From Macrostomum lignano (Eukaryota), in the NCBI GenBank assembly GCA_002269645.1, contig NIVC01000095.1, forward strand, positions 62,001-126,000: a stretch of DNA of 64,000 nucleotides, given 5' to 3'. The first letter of the stretch is position 1. Every line of letters starts with the position of its first letter. Under the pieces are notes generated by a model. The model saw nothing but the letters and a program-made list of their open reading frames with translations. It did not search any database and was not told where the DNA came from. Position numbers and translations under genes: made by a program. Shown here one piece after another: positions 4,879 to 20,718 of this stretch.

Positions 4879-6329
<1,451 letters not shown>

Positions 6330-10702: not shown

Positions 10703-11029
10703 AGCCAACCAAATAAGGCACAGAGTGTGTACATCCTGACGATTAGAAAATCAGAATCGCCTCAAACGCTGGTTGCGGGACGATGTAGTCGAAGGCGTTG
10801 CGCCAGAGTGCCCGCATCCCTTCCGCAATTTTACTGTCACACTACAAACATTTGTGATCATAGCCAAGTTCTATTTAGTAAAAGTAATAAGAACCGTATT
10901 AATTCTCTTGAGTCACTTACTTTACATACTACTTATTTGCTTGTTGATTAGTAAGTAGTATATCGAATTTGATTAGCTATCGCACTGCTTTATGTCTGTC
11001 TATGAACTGATAGAAAGTCACATATTGAG

Positions 11030-11635
11030 GTCAGTCTCTATGACCGAACTGAGACAATCAGTCAGTCTCTATGACAGAATTAACTCAAGCAATCAGTCTC
11101 TATGACTGAATTGAGACAATCAGTCAGTCTCTATGACTGAATTGAGACAATCAGTCAGTCTCTATGACCGAACTGAGACAATCAGTCAGTCTCTATGACC
11201 GAATTGAGACAATCAGTCAGTCTCTATGACCGAACTGAGACAATCAGTCAGTCTCTATGACCGAATTGAGACAATCAGTCAGTCTCTGTGACCGAATTGA
11301 GACAATCAGTCAGTCTCTATGACCGAATTGAGACAATCAGTCAGTCTCTATGATCGAGTTAACTCAAGCAATCAGTCTCTATGACCGAATTGAGACAATC
11401 AGTCAGTCTCTATGACCGAATTGAGACAATCAGTCAGTCTCTATGATCGAATTAACTCAAGCAATCAGTCTCTATGACTGAATTGAGATAATCAGTCAGT
11501 CTCTATGACCGAATTGAGACAATCAGTCAGTCTCTATGACCAAATTAAGATAAGCAATCAGTCTCTATGACCGAATTGAGACAATCAGTCAGTCTTTATG
11601 ATCGAATGGAGACAAGCGATCAGTCCCTATGAAGA
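11030..11635. repeat. 31-bp minisatellite CTCTATGACCGAATTGAGACAATCAGTCAGT
   Basis: Period 31 (11101 and 11132). Confidence 0.95.
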
Positions 11636-11729
11636 GAAAATAAGACTAAAAACTAGAGAATATTTAATTGGAGTTAAATTGAATACTAAGAGGAGCAGTA
11701 AGTGGGCGCAGGGCCCAAACCAGTATATT

Positions 11730-11802
11730 TATATCTTCCGCAGCTTCTTGATGACCAGCGGCTTCACATGGATCAGTACCTGACGGGCCTCGAAATAGCT
11801 TC
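11730..11802 (-). mobile_element. Distal fragment of the Gypsy pol interrupted by the SINE and Ngaro insertions
   Basis: Minus strand reads SYFEARQVLIHVKPLVIKKLRKI*, like the segment that follows the protease and precedes RT in Ty3/Gypsy pol; it continues ...FRARIVLK at 16460. Confidence 0.55.
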
Positions 11803-12015
11803 TTTTTTTTATTAGAGGCACCCTGGCGCACTTTAAGCGACATAGGCACACAACCGGCGAGAGGCATTACTGCCCATTCCGCCGACTCCCCTGAGCAGGC
11901 ACACAAGCGCGCGGATACGTACACAAGCACACACTCACACAGGAGTGTACAGCGGCCTAACTTTATTTTATCGTTAGGCATGTACACTTCTCTGCGCCTT
12001 GGGGGGTTGGCTCTC
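11803..12015 (-). mobile_element. 3' half of a tRNA-derived SINE (body plus AATAAAAAAAA tail), split by the Ngaro element
   Basis: Ends in a poly(A) tail on the minus strand; joins the SINE head at 16335-16459 when the Ngaro element is removed (GGCCTT/GAGAGCC). Confidence 0.6.
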
Positions 12016-12174
12016 ATGGACTGGGTGTGCGGCGAAAGTGCACAAACCGGCTTTAGTGCCCAGCGCGTTGATTGTACATCGCCGCCTGCCCCCCCCCTTG
12101 GGTGGCAGGGGTGTTTTTAAACCCCCGTCGTGCTCTACTGGCGGCTCACTTTGCCTTCTCGCAGTGAATTTTTT
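12016..12174 (+). repeat. Ngaro repeat A1
   Basis: Differs from A2 by one CpG transition, C-run length and a 7-bp TCGCAGT duplication. Confidence 0.95.
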
Positions 12175-12203
12175 GACTTAGAAATAGAAACTTTTGCTGA
12201 GTC

Positions 12204-13265
12204 ATGAACCGCACCCGTAGCCAGTCAGCCGATTCCGTCCCCACAACTGTGCCAGCACTGCGAGGGAAACTAAATGAGCTTGGTTTGCCAACCTCTGGCA
12301 ACAAAGCAAAACTAGTCCAAAGGCTTCGCGCCCATATTCAAGACGTGGAGACCTCTGTCGAGAGTGACGAGCTGACGAACGTTCAGGCCATTCTGCGAGC
12401 TACAGGGCAGAACTCGGCGGTAGCGAGCAGCGGGGGCAGCCCCCCAAATCGGCGACAGGTCGAGAACGGTGGGTCTGGCGCGGCTGGCGGCCTGGACGAA
12501 CAGCTGCTGGAGGCGGAGAAGCGAATCCGTCTGCTGAAGCTGTGCAAAGAAGAAGCGCAGCTGGAATCCGAGTTCGCGCAGCTACGGGTCGGCCGTTCTG
12601 AGGCACGTGATGTACCGGGTGAGTTGCTAAATTGCCTAACTGGATGTGTGCAGCATGAAGTTGGGCAGCAGCATGAGAACATGGGAGCCTCAGGGAGAAG
12701 TACCAGTAGCGTCTACCGAATCGTTGACTTCGTCAGCAAGCGCAAGCAGTGTCTTCTAGGCCAGAGTAAGTCTAAAGAAGTGGCGGTCGAGGCGCTGTCG
12801 TTAGGCGATTGGGTGACGGGCAATGCGCAGGCGATGCTTCAGATGCTGACTGACGGGCGTCTAGTCAGACTGGATCAGCATAGTCGATTGGATGTGGCAG
12901 AGCTCAGAGACTATCTCAGGTACACCGCACGCATTGGCGAGTTGTTGGACCTGGGCTTCGACAAGAGCCATGTAATGAGATTTGATGACGAGTGCCGGCT
13001 CAGCCAAGCGACTGATGGCAAGTGGGAGTCGCACAGCTCGGACCTGAGTCTGGTTGCGGCGTACCTCATGGCTCCCCAGAAGCAGCAATCGGGGGGTGGT
13101 GCCCAGAAGCGCAATCAACTGGTTTGCTTCGACTACAACAGGATAAGCGGGTGCGAACGCAAGAGCTGTCGGTTCCTGCATCGCTGCCGAAGATGCGGCC
13201 TGGCGCACTCTGAGGCAGCCTTCCACCGCGACGAATCGAGCGGTGAGGAGAAACCGCAACACTGA
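12204..13265 (+). CDS. Ngaro Gag-like ORF1 (353 aa): N-terminal SAP-like domain, C-terminal Cys/His zinc finger
   Basis: TVPALRGKLNELGLPTSGNKAKLVQRL is SAP-like; CFDYNRISGCERKSCRFLHRCRRCGLAH is a CCCH-type finger. Confidence 0.85.
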   Translation: MNRTRSQSADSVPTTVPALRGKLNELGLPTSGNKAKLVQRLRAHIQDVETSVESDELTNVQAILRATGQNSAVASSGGSPPNRRQVENGGSGAAGGLDEQLLEAEKRIRLLKLCKEEAQLESEFAQLRVGRSEARDVPGELLNCLTGCVQHEVGQQHENMGASGRSTSSVYRIVDFVSKRKQCLLGQSKSKEVAVEALSLGDWVTGNAQAMLQMLTDGRLVRLDQHSRLDVAELRDYLRYTARIGELLDLGFDKSHVMRFDDECRLSQATDGKWESHSSDLSLVAAYLMAPQKQQSGGGAQKRNQLVCFDYNRISGCERKSCRFLHRCRRCGLAHSEAAFHRDESSGEEKPQH

Positions 13266-15905
13266 CTCGATCATAGCGCGAATTTTATTCCTCCTGTTTT
13301 ATCCTCTGATCTCAATCTGGCCCAGTGGCAGGCGGAGTTGTCCAAGCTGGATCTCCCGCCCGGTCGGATGGCTTTTATCCTTGATGGCGTTGCTAGTGGC
13401 TTTCGCATCACCAATCGTCAGATGCATGGCAACGAGCTGGTTGAAGTGGCAAACTACTCATCGGTTTTTAAGCACCATGACAGAGTTGCGCGTCAGATTG
13501 CTAATGAGCTTCGTCTCGGTCGTTATCGTCTCTGTGCTGCTGGTGACAAACCTCGCATAGTCAGCGCCCTTGGTGCGCTGCCGAAGTCCAACGGTGGCGT
13601 TCGCTTAATCCATGACTGCAGCCGGCCGCAAGGGAAGTCTGTCAACTCCGCTTACGAGAGCGAGCAGAGACTGCGTTTCACCTGTGTCCAGAACTTTGCT
13701 AAGAGGCTTAAGAAGAATTACTTTATGTGCAAGGTCGATCTAAGCGAAGCCTATCGTTCATGTGGGATCCATCCTGACGACCAAAAGTTTACCGGTTTGA
13801 AGTTTCGGCTAGGTAGCGATGCTTGCGACACCTACATGGTGGACACGCGCCTGCCATTTGGTGCTGCTGCTTCCGTCACGGCTTTCTATCATCTCAGCGA
13901 GGCGGTCAAGTTGATGATGGTGCACCGCGGCTTCGTCAATACTGAGGCCTATCTGGACGATTTTGCCTTTTGCGGTTTGCAAAACGAGTGCGAGGCCTTC
14001 TTTAATGTGTTGACGTCACTGATGACCAGACTGGGCTTCACCGTGAATTGGACGAAGTGTCAGCGGCCTTCGCAAAGGATGACGTTTCTAGGTGTGGAGC
14101 TCGACACCGTCAAGGGCCTGAAGCGGCTTTCAGACGAGAAAGTGGAGAAACTTTTAGAGCAACTGGACGATGCTGCTGCCAAGGATCGCATCAGCAAGCA
14201 AAGTTTACAGCAGATCATCGGCAGGCTGGTGTGGGCTTCGCAGGTGATCGAATGCGGTCGCCCCTTTCTTCAGGACCTGATTTCGCGCTCTAACAATTTG
14301 GCCGTCGGTCAGCAAGATGAGGTGGATGCGGCCCTGCGTAGTCAGCTGCGCTGGTGGAAGTGTGCTCTGCTAGCTCAAAGGTGGAAGACTCTCTGGTTCA
14401 ATGGCGACTTCGATGCCGCGATCGAGTCGGACGCCTGCCTGGTGGGCGGCGCTGCCGTGCTGCGGTTGCCGGGGGGCGTGAGTGACTGGCGCTACGTTAA
14501 TTGGGATCTCGACGCGGATGCTGTTTTTCGGGATCTGCCTATCAATTACAAGGAGGCTGCGATACCTCTGATGGCGTTGCTGTCGTGGCGGGACCGCCTG
14601 CACAACTGTCGGCTGTGCATCTACTGCGATAATATGGCAGCGTGCTGTATTATCAACAATGGGGTCTCCAAGTGCCCTCTGGTGTTGAGGCTGTTGCAGA
14701 CGGTGGCGCTGCTTTGTATTCGTCAGAACATTCAGCTGCGTGCTTACCATGTGCCAGGGCCGTTTCAAATTTTTGCTGACGCCGCGTCTCGGCTGCACGA
14801 GGGCAGTCAGTTGTTGAATTTTTTGCTGCGCTTTTATGGCTCATTGATGCGTCTCACCAATTGCTCGCTTTCCCGGCACACGCTTTTCTGCTGCCACATC
14901 CGCTTTTCTCCGTTTTCAGGTCGCCAGACTGAGCCAGACCACCTCAGCCATCGAGCCCGTGAACTACTCGGTTCCTCCTACGCGGCCCGCTCGAAAAGTG
15001 CCATCAGCTCACACGTGCGGTCCTGGCGCGCGTACTGCTCAGCCAAGGGACTCGACCCCGCCGGGTGTACTGTGTCCACGCTGCTAAACTACCTGGCTGG
15101 CCTCACGGGCACGCGCCTGCGAGCCTACAGTAGCGTTCGCGGTCACGTCAGCTCGCTTTCACTGTGGTTTCGGCTGAACGGCGCTCAGGACCTGACGAAG
15201 CACACCCTCACCCAGCATCTGCTGCGGGGCTGCAAGCGAGCGCTGGGGCTTCAGGTCAACCAGAAGCTACCAATGTCTCCGTCGGTGCTGCAAAAGCTTT
15301 GGTCTCTGGTTGACAAGGGCGACAATCGGCAACTGGCCTGCTGGGCGGTCACCATCACTGCCTGGTGGGGGATGCTGCGAAAATCATCACTCCTATCGTC
15401 GCCTCAGTTGGGTAGTGGGATGAAGGTGCAGAATCTGACACCTCACCGTTGCGGCCTCCTCTTAAGCGTGGACTTTGGCAAGACTATTCAGTTCCGAGAT
15501 CGAGTCCATCACGTCCTGCTTCCGAAGTTCCCCGCCTGCCCCGCGCTCTGCCCGGTAGTGGCGATTCACCGACATCTGTGTGTCAACAAGCTGGCGATGG
15601 CCGAGGCGCCACTCTGGTCCTTCATCGATCGCAATGGACAGCGGCGCCATCTAGCTGCTCGGGACTTGGACCGGTTTCTTGACTCTAAGCTGCAGAGGGC
15701 TGCGTGTGGCGGCAAGCTCTACTCGGCTCACAGCCTGCGTCGAGGTGGAGCCACCTGGGCAGCTCGCATGGGCCTGCCGGTGGCGGAGATCCAGCGGATC
15801 GGCGACTGGAAGAGTTCGGCGGTGGAGCGCTACTTGCCCCGCTCGGGTGTTGCCACTGCTGCGGCCTCTCTGCATTTTTCTTCCGCCCTTAGTGCTCTTT
15901 TTTGA
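13266..15905 (+). CDS. Ngaro RT-RNase H-tyrosine recombinase fused ORF, in frame with gag directly after its TGA
   Basis: RT: LIHDCS, KVDLSEAY, LPFG, YLDDF. RNase H: ESDA, INYKEA, YCDN, FADAASR. YR: GMLRKS, GKTIQF, HSLRRGGAT, GDWKSSAVERY. No stop between 13266 and 15902; first ATG at 13368. Confidence 0.9.
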   Translation, partial: LDHSANFIPPVLSSDLNLAQWQAELSKLDLPPGRMAFILDGVASGFRITNRQMHGNELVEVANYSSVFKHHDRVARQIANELRLGRYRLCAAGDKPRIVSALGALPKSNGGVRLIHDCSRPQGKSVNSAYESEQRLRFTCVQNFAKRLKKNYFMCKVDLSEAYRSCGIHPDDQKFTGLKFRLGSDACDTYMVDTRLPFGAAASVTAFYHLSEAVKLMMVHRGFVNTEAYLDDFAFCGLQNECEAFFNVLTSLMTRLGFTVNWTKCQRPSQRMTFLGVELDTVKGLKRLSDEKVEKLLEQLDDAAAKDRISKQSLQQIIGRLVWASQVIECGRPFLQDLISRSNNLAVGQQDEVDAALRSQLRWWKCALLAQRWKTLWFNGDFDAAIESDACLVGGAAVLRLPGGVSDWRYVNWDLDADAVFRDLPINYKEAAIPLMALLSWRDRLHNCRLCIYCDNMAACCIINNGVSKCPLVLRLLQTVALLCIRQNIQLRAYHVPGPFQIFADAASRLHEGSQLLNFLLRFYGSLMRLTNCSLSRHTLFCCHIRFSPFSGRQTEPDHLSHRARELLGSSYAARSKSAISSHVRSWRAYCSAKGLDPAGCTVSTLLNYLAGLTGTRLRAYSSVRGHVSSLSLWFRLNGAQDLTKHTLTQHLLRGCKRALGLQVNQKLPMSPSVLQKLWSLVDKGDNRQLACWAVTITAWWGMLRKSSLLSSPQLGSGMKVQNLTPHRCGLLLSVDFGKTIQFRDRVHHVLLPKFPACPALCPVVAIHRHLCVNKLAMAEAPLWSFIDRNGQRRHLAARDLDRFLDSKLQRAACGGKLYSAHSLRRGGATWAARMGLPVAEIQRIGDWKSSAVERYLPRSGVATAAASLHFSSALSALF

Positions 15906-15967
15906 CGGTGCTCTTCCCGCTGATTTGTTTTTAGCTGCTGCTCTTATCCCCCGTTGTGTTTGGCTTT

Positions 15968-16030
15968 GGAGGCCTGCTTCGTTTCTGTGCCAAGTTCGTG
16001 TTTTTGTTGCCTTTGTTGCTGGAAGCACTA
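15968..16030 (+). repeat. Ngaro repeat B1 (63 bp)
   Basis: Identical to 16272-16334. Confidence 0.95.
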
Positions 16031-16200
16031 ATGGACTGGGTGTGCGGCGAAAGTGCACAAACCGGCTTTAGTGCCCAGCGCGTTGATTGTACATCGCCGC
16101 CTGCCCCCCCCCCCTTGGGTGGCAGGGGTGTTTTTAAACCCCCGTCGCGCTCTACTGGCGGCTCACTTTGCCTTCTCGCAGTTCGCAGTGAATTTTTTTT
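16031..16200 (+). repeat. Ngaro repeat A2
   Basis: Near-identical to A1. Confidence 0.95.
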
Positions 16201-16271
16201 CTTTTTCGTGTTAAGTTTGCTTTAAGCCAAATATACTCGTAGATTGAAGTTCGAAACACTTTTTTATTGAC

Positions 16272-16334
16272 GGAGGCCTGCTTCGTTTCTGTGCCAAGTT
16301 CGTGTTTTTGTTGCCTTTGTTGCTGGAAGCACTA
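16272..16334 (+). repeat. Ngaro repeat B2 (63 bp)
   Basis: Identical to B1; marks the right end. Confidence 0.95.
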
Positions 16335-16459
16335 AAGGCCGTTAATTGCACGAGCAGAGCCAAGCCAATTCAGCCCCAAATTAATGTGACTGCACTTGGA
16401 ATCGAGCCTGGGTCGCTGGCACACCAGAGCAGCTGCGCTACCGCTGGGCTACGGCCCCC
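16335..16459 (-). mobile_element. 5' half (tRNA-like head) of the split SINE
   Basis: GGCCGTAGCCCAGCGGTAGCG (A-box-like)...GGCTCGATTCC (B-box-like); no complete cloverleaf. Confidence 0.6.
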
Positions 16460-17574: not shown

Positions 17575-18219
17575 AAAGAGTAGAGTGAATGCAAAATATT
17601 AAGACAATTTTAAACTTTTGATTTTTAATGAGTAGTTTTTTGAACCGATAACAAGACTGAAATGACTGAATAGAGATGAGACTGGATTAGACCAGCCCCC
17701 CCCCCTTAAAATTAGCAATTTTTAACTGATGACAACTGGTACAGACCATACGAGCGTACAGTATAGAAAAAGTGTTGAAAAATAACGTCAGTTGAATATG
17801 AGAGATTGACTGCCGACACCGACTCCGAAGACGTGACGACGGTCCGAGTTGAATTGTGAATATGCCGAATTGATATTGTTTGAATTGGATGCAACAAACC
17901 AGCTCATTGAGTAAAAGCTTGGTATCGAAATGAAAGAAACTAAAATTGACATTTGACCCCTGCCTTGCCTGAATAAAATTGAACTCAAACAATTTCTCGA
18001 AATACCTGTGTTTGCTAAGCACAAAAATTTAATCTAAATAGGAGCGTACATGTATACGAGCGTAAATATATACATATGCAGCTTAACCAAATTCGATTAG
18101 CAAACTCGTTTTTCTATCTGAAACGCATTTGCTGACATTGCTTTTTTAAGATTTCCTGTCAGTGAGTTAATAGTGAAACTCGCTTTAACCTGGGGAAAAT
18201 CAATCCAGAGTTTTCGCCC

Positions 18220-18448
18220 TCTCCCTGCATCTCCCTCCCTGCATCTCCCTCCCTGCATCTCCCTTCCTGCATCTCCCTCCCTGCATCTCCCTCCCTGCAT
18301 CTCCCTCCCTGCATCTCCCTCCCTGCATCTCCCTTCCTGCATCTCCCTTCCTGCATCTCCCTCCCTGCATCTCCCTCCCTACATTTCACTCCCTGCATCT
18401 CTCTCCCTCCCTCCACATCCCTCCCTCCCTGCATCTCTCTCACTCTGC
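18220..18448. repeat. 14-bp minisatellite (CTCCCTCCCTGCAT)n
   Basis: Seen directly. Confidence 0.93.
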
Positions 18449-19290
18449 AACTCCTTCTTGTTACTTTTGCGATAACTAACAAATCATTTTAGTTAAATAT
18501 ATATAAACATTGACGAATTAAATGTTCGAACAGCTTATTTCAACTAAAAATTACTAGCACGAGCTAATTAATAATTGATTGTGTATTGCAAGCTAGAATT
18601 CCAAAAAATAATTGGTAGCTAAATAAACATGCTGAGTCACCCTGACCTAGACTGAGGTCTATACCTAGACTTCATTCAAATTGAAGTCACGTTCTTGACC
18701 TTGCGGAATTAGCTTGGGCTTGCTTAGCCTCAACTTTCCCAAATTCACAAGCAGCCGCAAGAAGGTTTCAATCAATTTTTTGAAGCTGAAAAATTGTCAA
18801 AACATTGTTTTTTTCCTTTCGGTGCAAACCCGTCATGTTTGACCCTGGGGTGCCAGATCGCGGTCCTGAAAGTGAATGTCGAGTTAATTAAAAACTATGT
18901 GTTCTGCAGAAAGACTATAGACCAGCTAGTGGTGGCATGAACCACTGTAAAAGCATCGTGGAATGGAAACCAGAAAAAGAAACCAGTCAATCATTATCAG
19001 ACATGAAAAATTATAAAAACTTTTTTTCAGAAATAAACCTTTGTTTTCGATTCTAAAAAAGCGTAGCATCAAAGCTTAGGGCTTCAAGTCCAAGTGTGTG
19101 TTTTGATAGTGGTCCATGCTTTTAGTGGTCCATGATTTATTGGACGAAATCGGCATAGCCAATAGGGTGAACTCAGTTTCCTGTCAATTCCTTGGCGTAC
19201 CTGGAACCTATATGGCGATAATTATTCTAGCTGGTAGAAGTGAATACTCAGTGCTCGAAATTTCGTAAAAAATCAAGACACAAAGCAGAG

Positions 19291-20718
19291 ATGCCGATCG
19301 TCATTAGAAAAAATACTAAATGGCTCATCCTGCTTATAACAGTTCAGCTGTACTCACAGGTAAACGGCAGTATCCCAGACTGTCCGGATAATTCAGTACG
19401 TCTGCTCACAGAAACAGTTGGAGGTCGACAAATTAGTCAGCTAATTGCTTTAATGCAACTGCCGATGGCTACGGAGTGCGAGTGGGTCTTGTTGGTTGAT
19501 GGTAAAAGCGTGGTTAGCGCCGGTGGCGGCAACATCAAAGGAAGCAAAATTTATAATCAGTTGTGCGGAGAGGCTGATAAAGCCGACGTTAGTGGCGGCA
19601 AGAACAAAGGTAGCGGAGAAAGCGTTGAAGGTGGAGACGTTAAAAGAGATGGTGGCGATATCAAAATAAATGACGGCAAGATTAAAAGAGATGGCGGCAA
19701 GTTCAAAAGAGACGGCGGCAAGTTCAAAACAGACGGCGGCGAAATCAAAGGAGACGACAGCGACATCAAAGGAGATGGCGGCCACATCAAAAGAGACGAC
19801 GGCAAAATCAAAATAAAGGGCGGCAAGATCAAAAGAGACGGCGGCAAGTTCAAAACAGACAACGGCGAAATCAAAGGAGACGGCGGCGACATCAAAGGAG
19901 ATGGCGGCCACATCAAAAGAAACGATGGCGACATCAAAATAAACGGTGGCAAGATCAAAAGAGATGGCGGCAAGTTCAAAAGAGACGGCGGCGACATCAA
20001 AGGAGACGGCGGTGACATCAAAAGAGACGGCGACGATATCAAAAGAAACGACAGTGACATCGAGAGAGACGGCAGCGACACTTCTAACAACGAGCTTTGT
20101 GGCAGTCGCGGCATTATCAAAGGTAGAAGAAGGTCAATCAATGCTGACACGTTCGATAGCAGCAGTTCAGGTAAGCTGACCTACGTAACCCGGCGCGACC
20201 AGGAAGGCAGGTGCCACGAGGTCAGCATCGAGCTGACCCAATCAGATAGCGGCCGCGACGGTGGCGGTAGATGGACTCGCCGTCAGCTGAAGTTCCCGGC
20301 CTTGTCAGATCTGATGCCTCGCCTAGTTGGAATTTGTCGCTACCATCTGGGCATTGATTGTCGGCAGCACCTGGTTTCTAAGTGGGATTCCCGACTGGCT
20401 TGTCCCTACACAGGCAGATCCCCTGTCAATAATAATTGTCGGCGACATCAAAGACAATTATCTGCTTTGCATCCAGCTGGAAGGTTTGGTTGTCGACAAG
20501 TTGTAGGACCAGATTGTCGAGTCTACCTGGCTGATCGGCGAGACTCTGGACTGCCTTGTCAAGATGCCGTGCTGCAAACCCAGCAACGCGAATTAAACAA
20601 AAATAATGCATCAGAAAGTTTGTCCTCATCTTCTGATGCTACTGTTAGTAGCACAGTGGGTGCATTAGTTGCTTGTAGTGTTTTGTACAAATCATTCATA
20701 TTGTTGGATTTGATGTGA
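19291..20718 (+). CDS. Uncharacterised secreted, probably GPI-anchored Cys-rich protein with 21 xIKxDGG heptad repeats (475 aa from ATG 19291)
   Basis: Signal-peptide-like WLILLITVQLYSQVNG; 21-bp coding repeat 19636-20076 varying codon-wise without breaking frame; 12 Cys in the flanking domains; Ser-rich then hydrophobic C-terminus. Confidence 0.75.
   Translation: MPIVIRKNTKWLILLITVQLYSQVNGSIPDCPDNSVRLLTETVGGRQISQLIALMQLPMATECEWVLLVDGKSVVSAGGGNIKGSKIYNQLCGEADKADVSGGKNKGSGESVEGGDVKRDGGDIKINDGKIKRDGGKFKRDGGKFKTDGGEIKGDDSDIKGDGGHIKRDDGKIKIKGGKIKRDGGKFKTDNGEIKGDGGDIKGDGGHIKRNDGDIKINGGKIKRDGGKFKRDGGDIKGDGGDIKRDGDDIKRNDSDIERDGSDTSNNELCGSRGIIKGRRRSINADTFDSSSSGKLTYVTRRDQEGRCHEVSIELTQSDSGRDGGGRWTRRQLKFPALSDLMPRLVGICRYHLGIDCRQHLVSKWDSRLACPYTGRSPVNNNCRRHQRQLSALHPAGRFGCRQVVGPDCRVYLADRRDSGLPCQDAVLQTQQRELNKNNASESLSSSSDATVSSTVGALVACSVLYKSFILLDLM

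What the first reader, a model, noticed from the sequence alone, without database searches (positions are those of the whole stretch)
12204..15905. Ngaro retrotransposon with gag, RT/RNase H and recombinase in one reading frame, broken by a single UGA-C
Seen: gag ends CAA CAC TGA (13263-13265) and the same frame continues CTC GAT CAT... with no stop to 15905, i.e. 1234 codons with one stop. RT-type sequence (DLNLAQWQAEL) lies upstream of the first pol ATG (13368), and RNase H runs directly into the YR domain. Known: described DIRS/Ngaro elements usually carry gag, RT/RH and YR as separate overlapping ORFs, and UGA followed by C is a leaky readthrough context in alphaviruses and some cellular genes. 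Inference: a Gag-RT-RH-YR polyprotein made by stop readthrough, an expression strategy I do not know from YR retrotransposons. Alternative: the TGA is a CGA>TGA CpG mutation in a natively single-ORF element, which would also be unusual.
Basis: partly seen in the sequence, partly recalled or inferred. Interest (0 to 1): 0.8.

Follow-up and report, generated by a model that had tools for sequence, protein, structure and literature searches.

The report
Ngaro retrotransposon with leaky gag stop
This is an intact Ngaro-type jumping gene whose single in-frame UGA between gag and pol is kept in distant relatives and so looks like a programmed leaky stop, as in some retroviruses, whereas the direct joining of RNase H to the recombinase comes from one extra base that its closest relatives lack.

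Summary
Window 12204-15905 reads as 1234 codons with one stop (TGA 13263-13265); the other two frames carry 48 and 51 stops. The element is a complete Ngaro with split direct repeats A1-B1-A2-B2.

The TGA is not a private CGA>TGA mutation. Three diverged relatives (pol 58-67% identical where known) have TGA-CTN-G at the same codon. Two others have A_AAA_AAC-TGA with pol in the -1 frame.

Among 48 Ngaro loci with a classifiable gag/pol junction:
- 18 have one in-frame stop (12 TGA, 6 TAG, 0 TAA), and RT homology starts 0-26 codons after it, often far upstream of any ATG.
- 19 have pol in the -1 frame, 14 of them with A_AAA_AAC in the correct phase.
- 10 have pol in the +1 frame.
- 1 (L026) has gag and RT in one frame with no stop between them.

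Gag-Pol by recoding therefore appears general in Ngaro. I found no description of it in the papers I could read.

The RH-YR fusion is derived. A net +1 nt at 14875-14891 puts YR in frame; 41 of 46 loci keep YR in another frame. Conserved, phase-matched splice signals suggest YR normally comes from a spliced gagN-YR mRNA.

The parts
12010..12174 (+). A1 split direct repeat (5' end of the element, about 12016)
   Evidence: Matches A2 at 16025-16198. The differences are 3 substitutions, a 2-nt C-run length difference and a 7-nt duplication.
12204..13265 (+). gag ORF (353 aa plus TGA). SAP domain at 12246-12338, coiled-coil-like stretch at 12492-12587, C-x8-C-x5-C-x3-H finger at 13125-13181.
   Evidence: Gag homologues are 43-58% identical in L001-L003, L084 and L085.
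13263..13271 (+). Putative leaky stop and its context: UGA CUC GAU
   Evidence: The same codon is TGA CTC GGT in L001, TGA CTA GGC in L002 and TGA CTA GGC in L085. Across the in-frame-stop class, TGA-C occurs in 10 of 12 TGA cases and TAA never occurs.
13266..14891 (+). pol (RT/RNase H region), open from the codon after the stop; YLDD at 13950-13961; first ATG at 13368
   Evidence: RVT_1 hit. RT homology starts at the first codon after the stop. Relatives carry PF17917 RT_RNaseH; no Pfam RNase H hit in the window copy itself.
12616..12624 (+). Putative 5' splice donor CGG|GTGAGT inside gag (GT at 12619-12620; phase 1, after gag aa 138)
   Evidence: 10.2 bits. A GTGAG(T/C) donor sits at the homologous gag site in all six clade members.
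14875..14891 (+). Site of the net +1 nt relative to L001 and L002 that brings YR into the pol frame
   Evidence: DNA alignment. The ancestral ORF2 tail is still readable in the alternative frame.
14903..14919 (+). Putative 3' splice acceptor CTTTTCTCCGTTTTCAG| (exon 2 starts at 14920, codon position 2 of the YR frame)
   Evidence: A pyrimidine tract plus YAG lies at the same place in most Ngaro loci: 73% score >=13 against 4.6% of control windows. Acceptor phase is 1 in 25 of 31 loci.
14920..15905 (+). Tyrosine recombinase coding region (LRKSS Arg at 15372-15389, HSLRRGG at 15729-15749, catalytic Tyr in AVERYL at 15819-15836; stop at 15903-15905)
15968..16034 (+). B1 repeat
   Evidence: 98.5% identical to B2.
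16025..16198 (+). A2 repeat
16272..16338 (+). B2 repeat (3' end of the element)

Best explanation
Window 12010-16338 is a young, coding-intact Ngaro (tyrosine-recombinase) retrotransposon, probably in a Macrostomum-like flatworm genome. Most ribosomes finish Gag at UGA 13263. A minority read through the UGA-CUC context and continue into RT/RNase H, giving a Gag-Pol fusion in the way gammaretroviruses and alphaviruses use leaky stops (inferred from comparative sequence, not shown experimentally). The in-frame continuation from RNase H into the recombinase is not part of the conserved design. It results from one extra nucleotide at 14875-14891 in the region where the pol tail and the YR head overlap in the closest relatives. 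In this lineage or copy, readthrough product would therefore also carry YR. The recombinase is probably normally made from a spliced mRNA that joins gag codons 1-138 (SAP plus coiled coil) at donor 12619 to acceptor 14919/14920. That gives a product of about 466 aa (inferred; weaker than the readthrough claim).
For: (1) The stop is conserved. TGA-CTN-G sits at the same codon in L001 (pol 67% identical), L002 (58%) and L085, with synonymous changes around it and no indel across the 188 aligned nt of WIN, L001 and L002.
(2) Two further clade members (L003, L084) end gag with A_AAA_AAC TGA and have pol in the -1 frame. That is a canonical frameshift site in the correct phase, so Gag-Pol fusion by recoding is the clade's rule.
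(3) Survey of 48 classifiable Ngaro junctions: 18 have a single in-frame stop (12 TGA, 6 TAG, 0 TAA; TGA-C 10 of 12, TAG-G 5 of 6). RT homology begins 0-26 codons after the stop while the first ATG is 2-201 codons away. In the -1 class, 14 of 19 have A_AAA_AAC in phase (heptamer phase counts 22:5:4).
(4) The junction type is shared within RT clades.
(5) YR frame: the +1 nt shows in the DNA alignment. YR is -1 in 23 loci, +1 in 18 and in-frame without a stop in only 3, counting the window.
(6) Splice signals: in 21 of 31 loci the best gag donor is in the phase compatible with the acceptor (p=9e-5 against 1/3; phase 1 wins in 37% of RT-region controls). Mean compatible-donor score is 8.6 bits against 5.8 bits in the control. 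GTGAG(T/C) is invariant at the homologous gag site in all six clade members.
Against: There is no experimental evidence. No stable or covarying RNA structure lies 3' of the UGA (z = 0.16, 0.97, 2.15). pN/pS in the 34 codons between the stop and the first ATG is only mildly below 1 (0.56-0.82, against 0.86-1.54 in control frames). No same-family copy (>80% identical) could be retrieved, so I cannot say whether the +1 nt is lineage-wide, private to this copy or an assembly error. The splice model rests on a hand-made position weight matrix and no spliced transcript was seen. The founding Ngaro papers were not readable here.
Confidence: 0.68

Rival explanations
1. The TGA is a private nonsense mutation (for example CGA>TGA at a CpG) in an element whose native state is one uninterrupted ORF.
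For: Uninterrupted gag-pol ORFs do occur elsewhere in Ngaro: L026 and P0048, a continuous 874-aa gag-RT ORF.
Against: TGA sits at the same codon in L001, L002 and L085. L003 and L084 also stop there, but with a frameshift site. CpG observed/expected in the element is 0.92, so there is no sign of heavy CpG decay.
Confidence: 0.03
2. Pol is translated independently of gag, by initiation at AUG 13368, at a non-AUG codon, or by reinitiation. The shared frame would then be irrelevant.
For: An ATG exists 34 codons after the stop. Selection on those 34 codons is weak.
Against: Conserved pol residues (W21, D29) precede that ATG. In L010, L017, L018, L024 and L075 the first ATG is 107-201 codons downstream, inside RT. 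Sister elements use a canonical -1 frameshift site, which only makes sense for a fusion protein.
Confidence: 0.1
3. The RH-YR in-frame join is a private post-insertion indel or an assembly error in this copy and has no biological meaning.
For: A net +1 nt relative to L001 and L002 lies inside an overlap of about 325 nt where any such indel would fuse the frames. YR is out of the pol frame in the three close relatives that include it and in 41 of 46 loci overall.
Against: It is the only frame-changing difference in 3.7 kb of otherwise intact coding sequence. A random single indel would land in that overlap only about 9% of the time (my estimate). RT-RH and YR in one frame is reported for some fungal Ngaros (PMC3783388) and seen in L037.
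Confidence: 0.3
4. In the relatives, YR is reached by ribosomal frameshifting from pol rather than by splicing.
For: The YR frame overlaps the pol tail by 229-301 nt, with no ATG before YR homology in L001-L003.
Against: No X_XXY_YYZ heptamer lies in the overlap of L001 or L003. YR is -1 in 23 loci and +1 in 18, which is awkward for a single frameshift mechanism. Splice-like signals are conserved and phase-matched.
Confidence: 0.15
5. UGA is decoded as selenocysteine, or the host uses a variant genetic code.
For: None beyond the codon being UGA.
Against: Six of the 18 in-frame-stop elements use TAG instead. The window's UGA sits exactly at the gag end, where relatives also terminate.
Confidence: 0.01

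Closest known systems
Ngaro retrotransposons (DIRS order; Goodwin & Poulter 2004; described in PMC3783388, PMC9210276, PMC8547959)
   Same: Gene order gag, RT/RH, YR. No methyltransferase, protease or DDE integrase domain was detected. Split direct repeats A1...B1-A2-B2. YR with R, HxxR and Y.
   Different: Gag carries a SAP domain and a CCCH-type finger. The papers I could read describe separate or overlapping ORFs and do not mention a leaky stop, a slippery heptamer or splicing. In this copy all three genes share one frame.
Gammaretrovirus (MLV) gag-UAG-pol readthrough
   Same: An in-frame stop separates gag from pol. Pol has no start codon of its own. A minority Gag-Pol fusion is expected (established knowledge of MLV).
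   Different: MLV uses UAG-G plus a downstream pseudoknot. Here the signal is UGA-CUC with no supported 3' structure. The TAG-G Ngaro clade (L012, L017, L070) resembles MLV more closely and has a conserved hairpin.
Alphavirus nsP3/nsP4 UGA-C, plant-virus type II UGA-CUA/CGG, and metazoan UGA-CUAG readthrough genes
   Same: UGA followed by C and a CUN codon. L002 and L085 have an exact UGA CUA G. That this context is leaky is from my own knowledge of the literature, not tested here.
   Different: The setting is different (a retrotransposon gag-pol junction). The window has CUC rather than CUA.
Retroviral -1 frameshifting at A_AAA_AAC (MMTV and HTLV type)
   Same: Sister elements L003 and L084, and 14 of 19 loci in the -1 class, carry this heptamer in the correct phase 7-43 nt before the gag stop.
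   Different: The window itself does not use it. The window has the in-frame-stop alternative.
Spliced subgenomic mRNAs of retroelements (retroviral env; copia gag mRNA)
   Same: A donor early in the element and an acceptor just before a 3' gene would let that gene be translated without recoding.
   Different: Here the predicted product is a fusion of the gag N-terminal DNA-binding and coiled-coil part with the recombinase. No transcript evidence exists.

Membership tests
Ngaro (YR retrotransposon, DIRS order) | RT/RNase H pol related to other Ngaro/DIRS pols | tested here: met
   RVT_1 E=2e-11. 96 homologues were found. The loci fetched with them show gag, RT/RH, YR order wherever the contig is long enough. 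No Pfam RNase H hit in the window copy itself; relatives carry PF17917.
Ngaro (YR retrotransposon, DIRS order) | Tyrosine recombinase with catalytic R, HxxR and Y instead of a DDE integrase | tested here: met
   R153, H270-x-x-R273 and Y304 are invariant in the alignment with 7 other YRs. The Phage_integrase hit (22.2 bits) is below Pfam's 27.1-bit cut-off.
Ngaro (YR retrotransposon, DIRS order) | Split direct repeats A1 - internal - B1 A2 B2 | tested here: met
   A: 12010-12174 and 16025-16198. B: 15968-16034 and 16272-16338. A 73-nt spacer separates A2 from B2.
Ngaro (YR retrotransposon, DIRS order) | No methyltransferase domain (this separates Ngaro from DIRS1 and PAT) | tested here: met
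   No Pfam hit other than RVT_1 and Phage_integrase. There is no room between RNase H and YR.
Ngaro (YR retrotransposon, DIRS order) | Phylogenetic placement with reference Ngaro elements (Repbase) | not testable with these tools
   No Repbase or Dfam library is available here. Classification rests on structure.
Programmed stop-codon readthrough | The in-frame stop is kept at the same codon in diverged relatives | tested here: met
   WIN, L001, L002 and L085; 18 of 48 loci in the survey.
Programmed stop-codon readthrough | The downstream ORF is conserved from the stop onward and lacks its own start codon | tested here: met
   RT homology starts 0-26 codons after the stop; the first ATG is up to 201 codons away. 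D29 is nearly invariant and lies upstream of the window's ATG.
Programmed stop-codon readthrough | Leaky stop identity and 3' context | tested here: met
   12 TGA, 6 TAG, 0 TAA; TGA-C in 10 of 12; CUN follows the stop in 8 of the 18. That these contexts are leaky is prior knowledge.
Programmed stop-codon readthrough | Stimulatory 3' RNA structure (needed for the MLV type only) | tested here: not met
   z-scores 0.16, 0.97 and 2.15; consensus -7 kcal/mol with positive covariation term.
Programmed stop-codon readthrough | Readthrough protein or ribosome footprints past the stop | not testable with these tools
   No expression data are available.
   YR is -1 in L001-L003. Across all loci: 23 are -1, 18 are +1, and 3 (including the window) are in the same frame with no stop.
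Spliced subgenomic mRNA for the 3' gene | Conserved, phase-compatible donor and acceptor | tested here: met
Spliced subgenomic mRNA for the 3' gene | Spliced transcript observed | not testable with these tools
   No RNA data are available. L086 is an unspliced, degenerate copy.

The most novel reading that the evidence does not exclude
Ngaro retrotransposons as a group may express their genes the way retroviruses do. Gag-Pol would be made by translational recoding, with lineages switching between a leaky UGA/UAG and an A_AAA_AAC -1 frameshift. The tyrosine recombinase would be made from a conserved spliced mRNA that fuses the gag N-terminal DNA-binding and coiled-coil module to YR. Neither feature appears in the literature I could read. 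The window element would be a variant in which one extra base additionally places YR on the readthrough product.
Probability: 0.4. Interest if true: 0.7.

Novelty: new variant of a known kind. Interest (0 to 1): 0.5.

Why it matters
How YR retrotransposons make and dose their proteins is barely studied. The reviews I could read simply list three separate or overlapping ORFs. Conserved recoding signals would show that the Gag:Pol ratio is controlled as in retroviruses, and that lineages have switched repeatedly between readthrough and frameshifting. A spliced gagN-YR product would link ORF1 physically to the integrase. That would give a concrete mechanism for the reported dependence of Ngaro integration-site choice on ORF1 (PMC8547959). 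Both ideas are directly testable with RNA-seq and reporter assays. For annotation, Ngaro gag and pol separated by one stop should not be scored as a broken element.

Tried and rejected
- Same-family copies: exact look-up of the window's gag and pol found nothing. Three homology searches found nothing above 67-71% identity apart from a fragmented Macrostomum lignano gene model. Whether the TGA and the +1 nt are fixed within the family therefore remains untested.
- RNA structure 3' of the UGA: no support.
- An intron that removes the stop: the GTGAGG at 13243 paired with the AG at 13276 would be 34 nt and out of frame, and it is not conserved in L001 or L002 (by eye). Rejected.
- Canonical -1 slippery heptamers in the pol/YR overlap: none in L001 or L003.
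- Longer proteins P0032 and P0048, taken at first for RT-YR fusions, are gag-RT fusions with no YR.
- L086 was checked as a possible spliced cDNA and is an unspliced, degenerate copy.
- Literature: 10 searches found no paper on readthrough, programmed frameshifting or native splicing in Ngaro or DIRS elements. Goodwin & Poulter 2004 was not held. Poulter & Goodwin 2005 and Poulter & Butler 2015 were not looked up by id; neither appeared among the search results.
- Pfam on ten other long ORFs of the window gave only a proline-racemase hit.
Full report
**Observation**

Window 12204-15905 (+) translates as 1234 codons with a single internal stop, TGA at 13263-13265, followed by CTC GAT. The two other frames of the same stretch contain 48 and 51 stops. 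The first 353 codons have a SAP domain (E=2.5e-10). The following 879 hit RVT_1 (E=2e-11) and, below Pfam's cut-off, Phage_integrase. An alignment with seven other recombinases shows the catalytic Arg, HxxR and Tyr intact.

The coding block is framed by Ngaro-type split direct repeats. A1 is 12010-12174 and A2 is 16025-16198. B1 is 15968-16034 and B2 is 16272-16338. The window holds only this one copy. The element has 56% GC against 44% for the window, and its CpG observed/expected ratio is 0.92. The closest named proteins are Macrostomum lignano gene models, so the host is probably a macrostomid flatworm.

**Is the TGA an accident?**

It is not. I retrieved five diverged members of the same SAP-gag clade from public assemblies.
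- L001 (pol 67% identical) reads ...SSSRQH TGA CTC GGT..., with gag and pol in one frame.
- L002 (58%) reads ...QQQQQH TGA CTA GGC....
- L085 reads ...GRPTQ TGA CTA GGC....

WIN, L001 and L002 align without a single gap across 188 nt around the stop, with synonymous changes on both sides.

The two remaining members, L003 and L084, terminate gag at the same place. They end in CCA AAA AAC TGA and GCA AAA AAC TGA, and their pol is in the -1 frame. A_AAA_AAC in that phase is the classical retroviral -1 frameshift heptamer. Every member of the clade therefore has a gag/pol junction that makes sense only if Gag-Pol is produced by recoding.

**Survey of Ngaro junctions**

A pattern scan of metagenome contigs gave 80 more Ngaro loci with RT about 35% identical. 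Of 48 junctions that could be classified:
- 18 have one in-frame stop between an upstream ORF of at least 300 aa and pol.
- 19 have pol in the -1 frame.
- 10 have pol in the +1 frame.
- 1 (L026) has gag and RT in one frame with no stop between them.

In the in-frame class the stops are 12 TGA, 6 TAG and no TAA. TGA is followed by C in 10 of 12 cases and TAG by G in 5 of 6. RT homology begins 0-26 codons after the stop, while the first in-frame ATG lies 2-201 codons downstream, inside RT in several elements.

In the -1 class, 14 of 19 carry A_AAA_AAC in the correct phase 7-43 nt before the gag stop. Two others carry G_GGA_AAC or U_UUA_AAC. Heptamer counts by phase are 22:5:4. On a neighbour-joining tree of RT, the junction type is shared within clades and has switched several times. 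The in-frame stop is thus a maintained, heritable feature of many Ngaro lineages.

**Mechanism at the window's stop**

UGA followed by C, and by a CUN codon, is a context known to be leaky in alphaviruses, in some plant viruses and in metazoan UGA-CUAG genes. This is my own knowledge and was not tested here. I found no conserved or unusually stable structure downstream. Purifying selection on the 34 codons between the stop and the first ATG is only modest: pN/pS is 0.56-0.82, against 0.86-1.54 in the other frames. However, that stretch contains residues conserved across Ngaro pols. I rejected three alternatives. Independent initiation fails because conserved coding precedes any ATG. An intron that removes the stop would be out of frame and is not conserved. 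Selenocysteine fails because sister clades use TAG.

**The RNase H to recombinase join**

In L001, L002 and L003 the YR is in the -1 frame relative to RT/RH, with an overlap of 229-301 nt. A DNA alignment shows that the window carries one net extra base at 14875-14891. Downstream of it, the ancestral ORF2 tail can still be read in the alternative frame.

Across 46 loci, YR is -1 in 23 and +1 in 18. It is in frame without a stop in only 3, including the window. A same-frame arrangement is reported for some fungal Ngaros (PMC3783388), so the state is neither new nor the norm. I could not find a same-family copy to decide whether the extra base is lineage-wide. It is the only frame-changing difference in 3.7 kb of intact coding sequence. 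That argues mildly for its presence in the active parent, but a private indel or an assembly error remains possible at about 0.3.

**How YR is probably expressed**

In 25 of the 46 loci there is no ATG in the YR frame before YR homology starts. There is also no slippery heptamer in the overlap of L001 or L003. Instead, almost every locus has a pyrimidine tract followed by YAG|G about 20-35 nt upstream of where YR homology starts. The acceptor-like score is at least 13 in 73% of loci, against 4.6% of control windows taken from RT. The first exon base is codon position 2 of the YR frame in 25 of 31 loci, whatever the frame relation to pol.

Within gag, the strongest 5' splice-site match lies in the phase compatible with that acceptor in 21 of 31 loci. 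That gives p=9e-5 against an expectation of 1/3; in RT-region controls, phase 1 wins 37% of the time. The mean compatible-donor score is 8.6 bits, against 5.8 bits in the control.

In the window's clade, all six members have GTGAG(T/C) at the homologous gag site although the surrounding amino acids differ: DVPG|ELL, PPG|ELL, NHG|ELY, PPC|EYP, DDG|ECR and RPG|ELF. In the window the donor GT is at 12619-12620 and exon 2 starts at 14920. Joining them gives an open 466-codon frame that encodes gag residues 1-138 (SAP and coiled coil) fused to the whole recombinase. The M. lignano gene model P0003 joins its YR at the position homologous to this acceptor (protein-level comparison by eye). This is a computational inference without transcript evidence. 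If it is right, the window's extra base lies inside the intron and does not affect that product.

**Literature**

The papers I could read describe Ngaro as having gag, RT/RH and YR ORFs that are separate or overlapping. They note that YR may or may not share the RT frame (PMC3783388, PMC3266345, PMC9210276, PMC8547959). Ten searches found no mention of readthrough, programmed frameshifting or native splicing in these elements. Goodwin & Poulter 2004 was not available, and I did not try to fetch the two Poulter reviews by id, so I cannot exclude prior description.

**Verdict**

The feature is a real, intact Ngaro element. The single UGA is best read as a programmed leaky stop giving Gag-Pol (confidence about 0.7). 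This is one of at least two recoding solutions used across Ngaro. The Gag-RT-RH-YR single-frame layout comes from one extra base in this copy or lineage and is not a conserved expression strategy. I rate it as a new variant of a known kind, of moderate interest. The broader pattern (recoding plus a conserved gag-to-YR intron) is the part worth following up.

Noticed in passing
window 12616-12624 and 14903-14919; also L001-L003, L084, L085 and most of L004-L083: Conserved, phase-matched splice donor (in gag) and acceptor (just before YR). They predict a spliced mRNA that encodes a fusion of the gag N-terminus with YR.
   Followed up: yes
L003 1046-1059; L084 about 856-868; 14 of 19 loci in the -1 class: Canonical A_AAA_AAC -1 frameshift heptamer in the correct phase just before the gag stop in many Ngaro elements.
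   Followed up: yes
L012 1254-1360, L017 1647-1753, L070 1722-1828: The TAG-GAT clade has a conserved hairpin (GCCAGGCC...GGCATGGC) starting about 24 nt after the stop. It could be a readthrough stimulator of the MLV or alphavirus kind.
   Followed up: partly
window 12246-12338 and 13125-13226: Gag carries an N-terminal SAP (DNA-binding) domain and a C-terminal C-x8-C-x5-C-x3-H finger followed by C-x2-C-x3-H-x5-H. The fingers are not significant in Pfam (zf-CCCH_10, E=1.9).
   Followed up: partly
L016, L019, L027, L033, L039, L045, L051, L069, L073, L077: Ten Ngaro loci have pol in the +1 frame relative to gag, with overlaps of 59-383 nt in the nine measured. I looked for no mechanism.
   Followed up: no
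L026; P0048: In L026 gag and RT are in one frame with no stop between them. P0048 is an 874-aa gag-RT ORF labelled as a Methylococcales MAG protein, so it is probably eukaryotic contamination in that bin.
   Followed up: partly
window 10906-11742, 18179-18458, 19570-20139: Tandem arrays flank the element, with periods of 31 nt (just upstream of A1), 14 nt (CTCCCTGCATCTCC) and 21 nt.
   Followed up: no
window 5274-6329 (+): An ORF with a strong proline-racemase family hit (PF05544, E=1.2e-32). It is probably an exon of a host gene.
   Followed up: no
window 12089-12099 vs 16104-16116, and 16176-16183: A1 and A2 differ by a C-run length (9 vs 11 C) and a 7-nt TCGCAGT duplication. A 73-nt unique spacer separates A2 from B2.
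   Followed up: no
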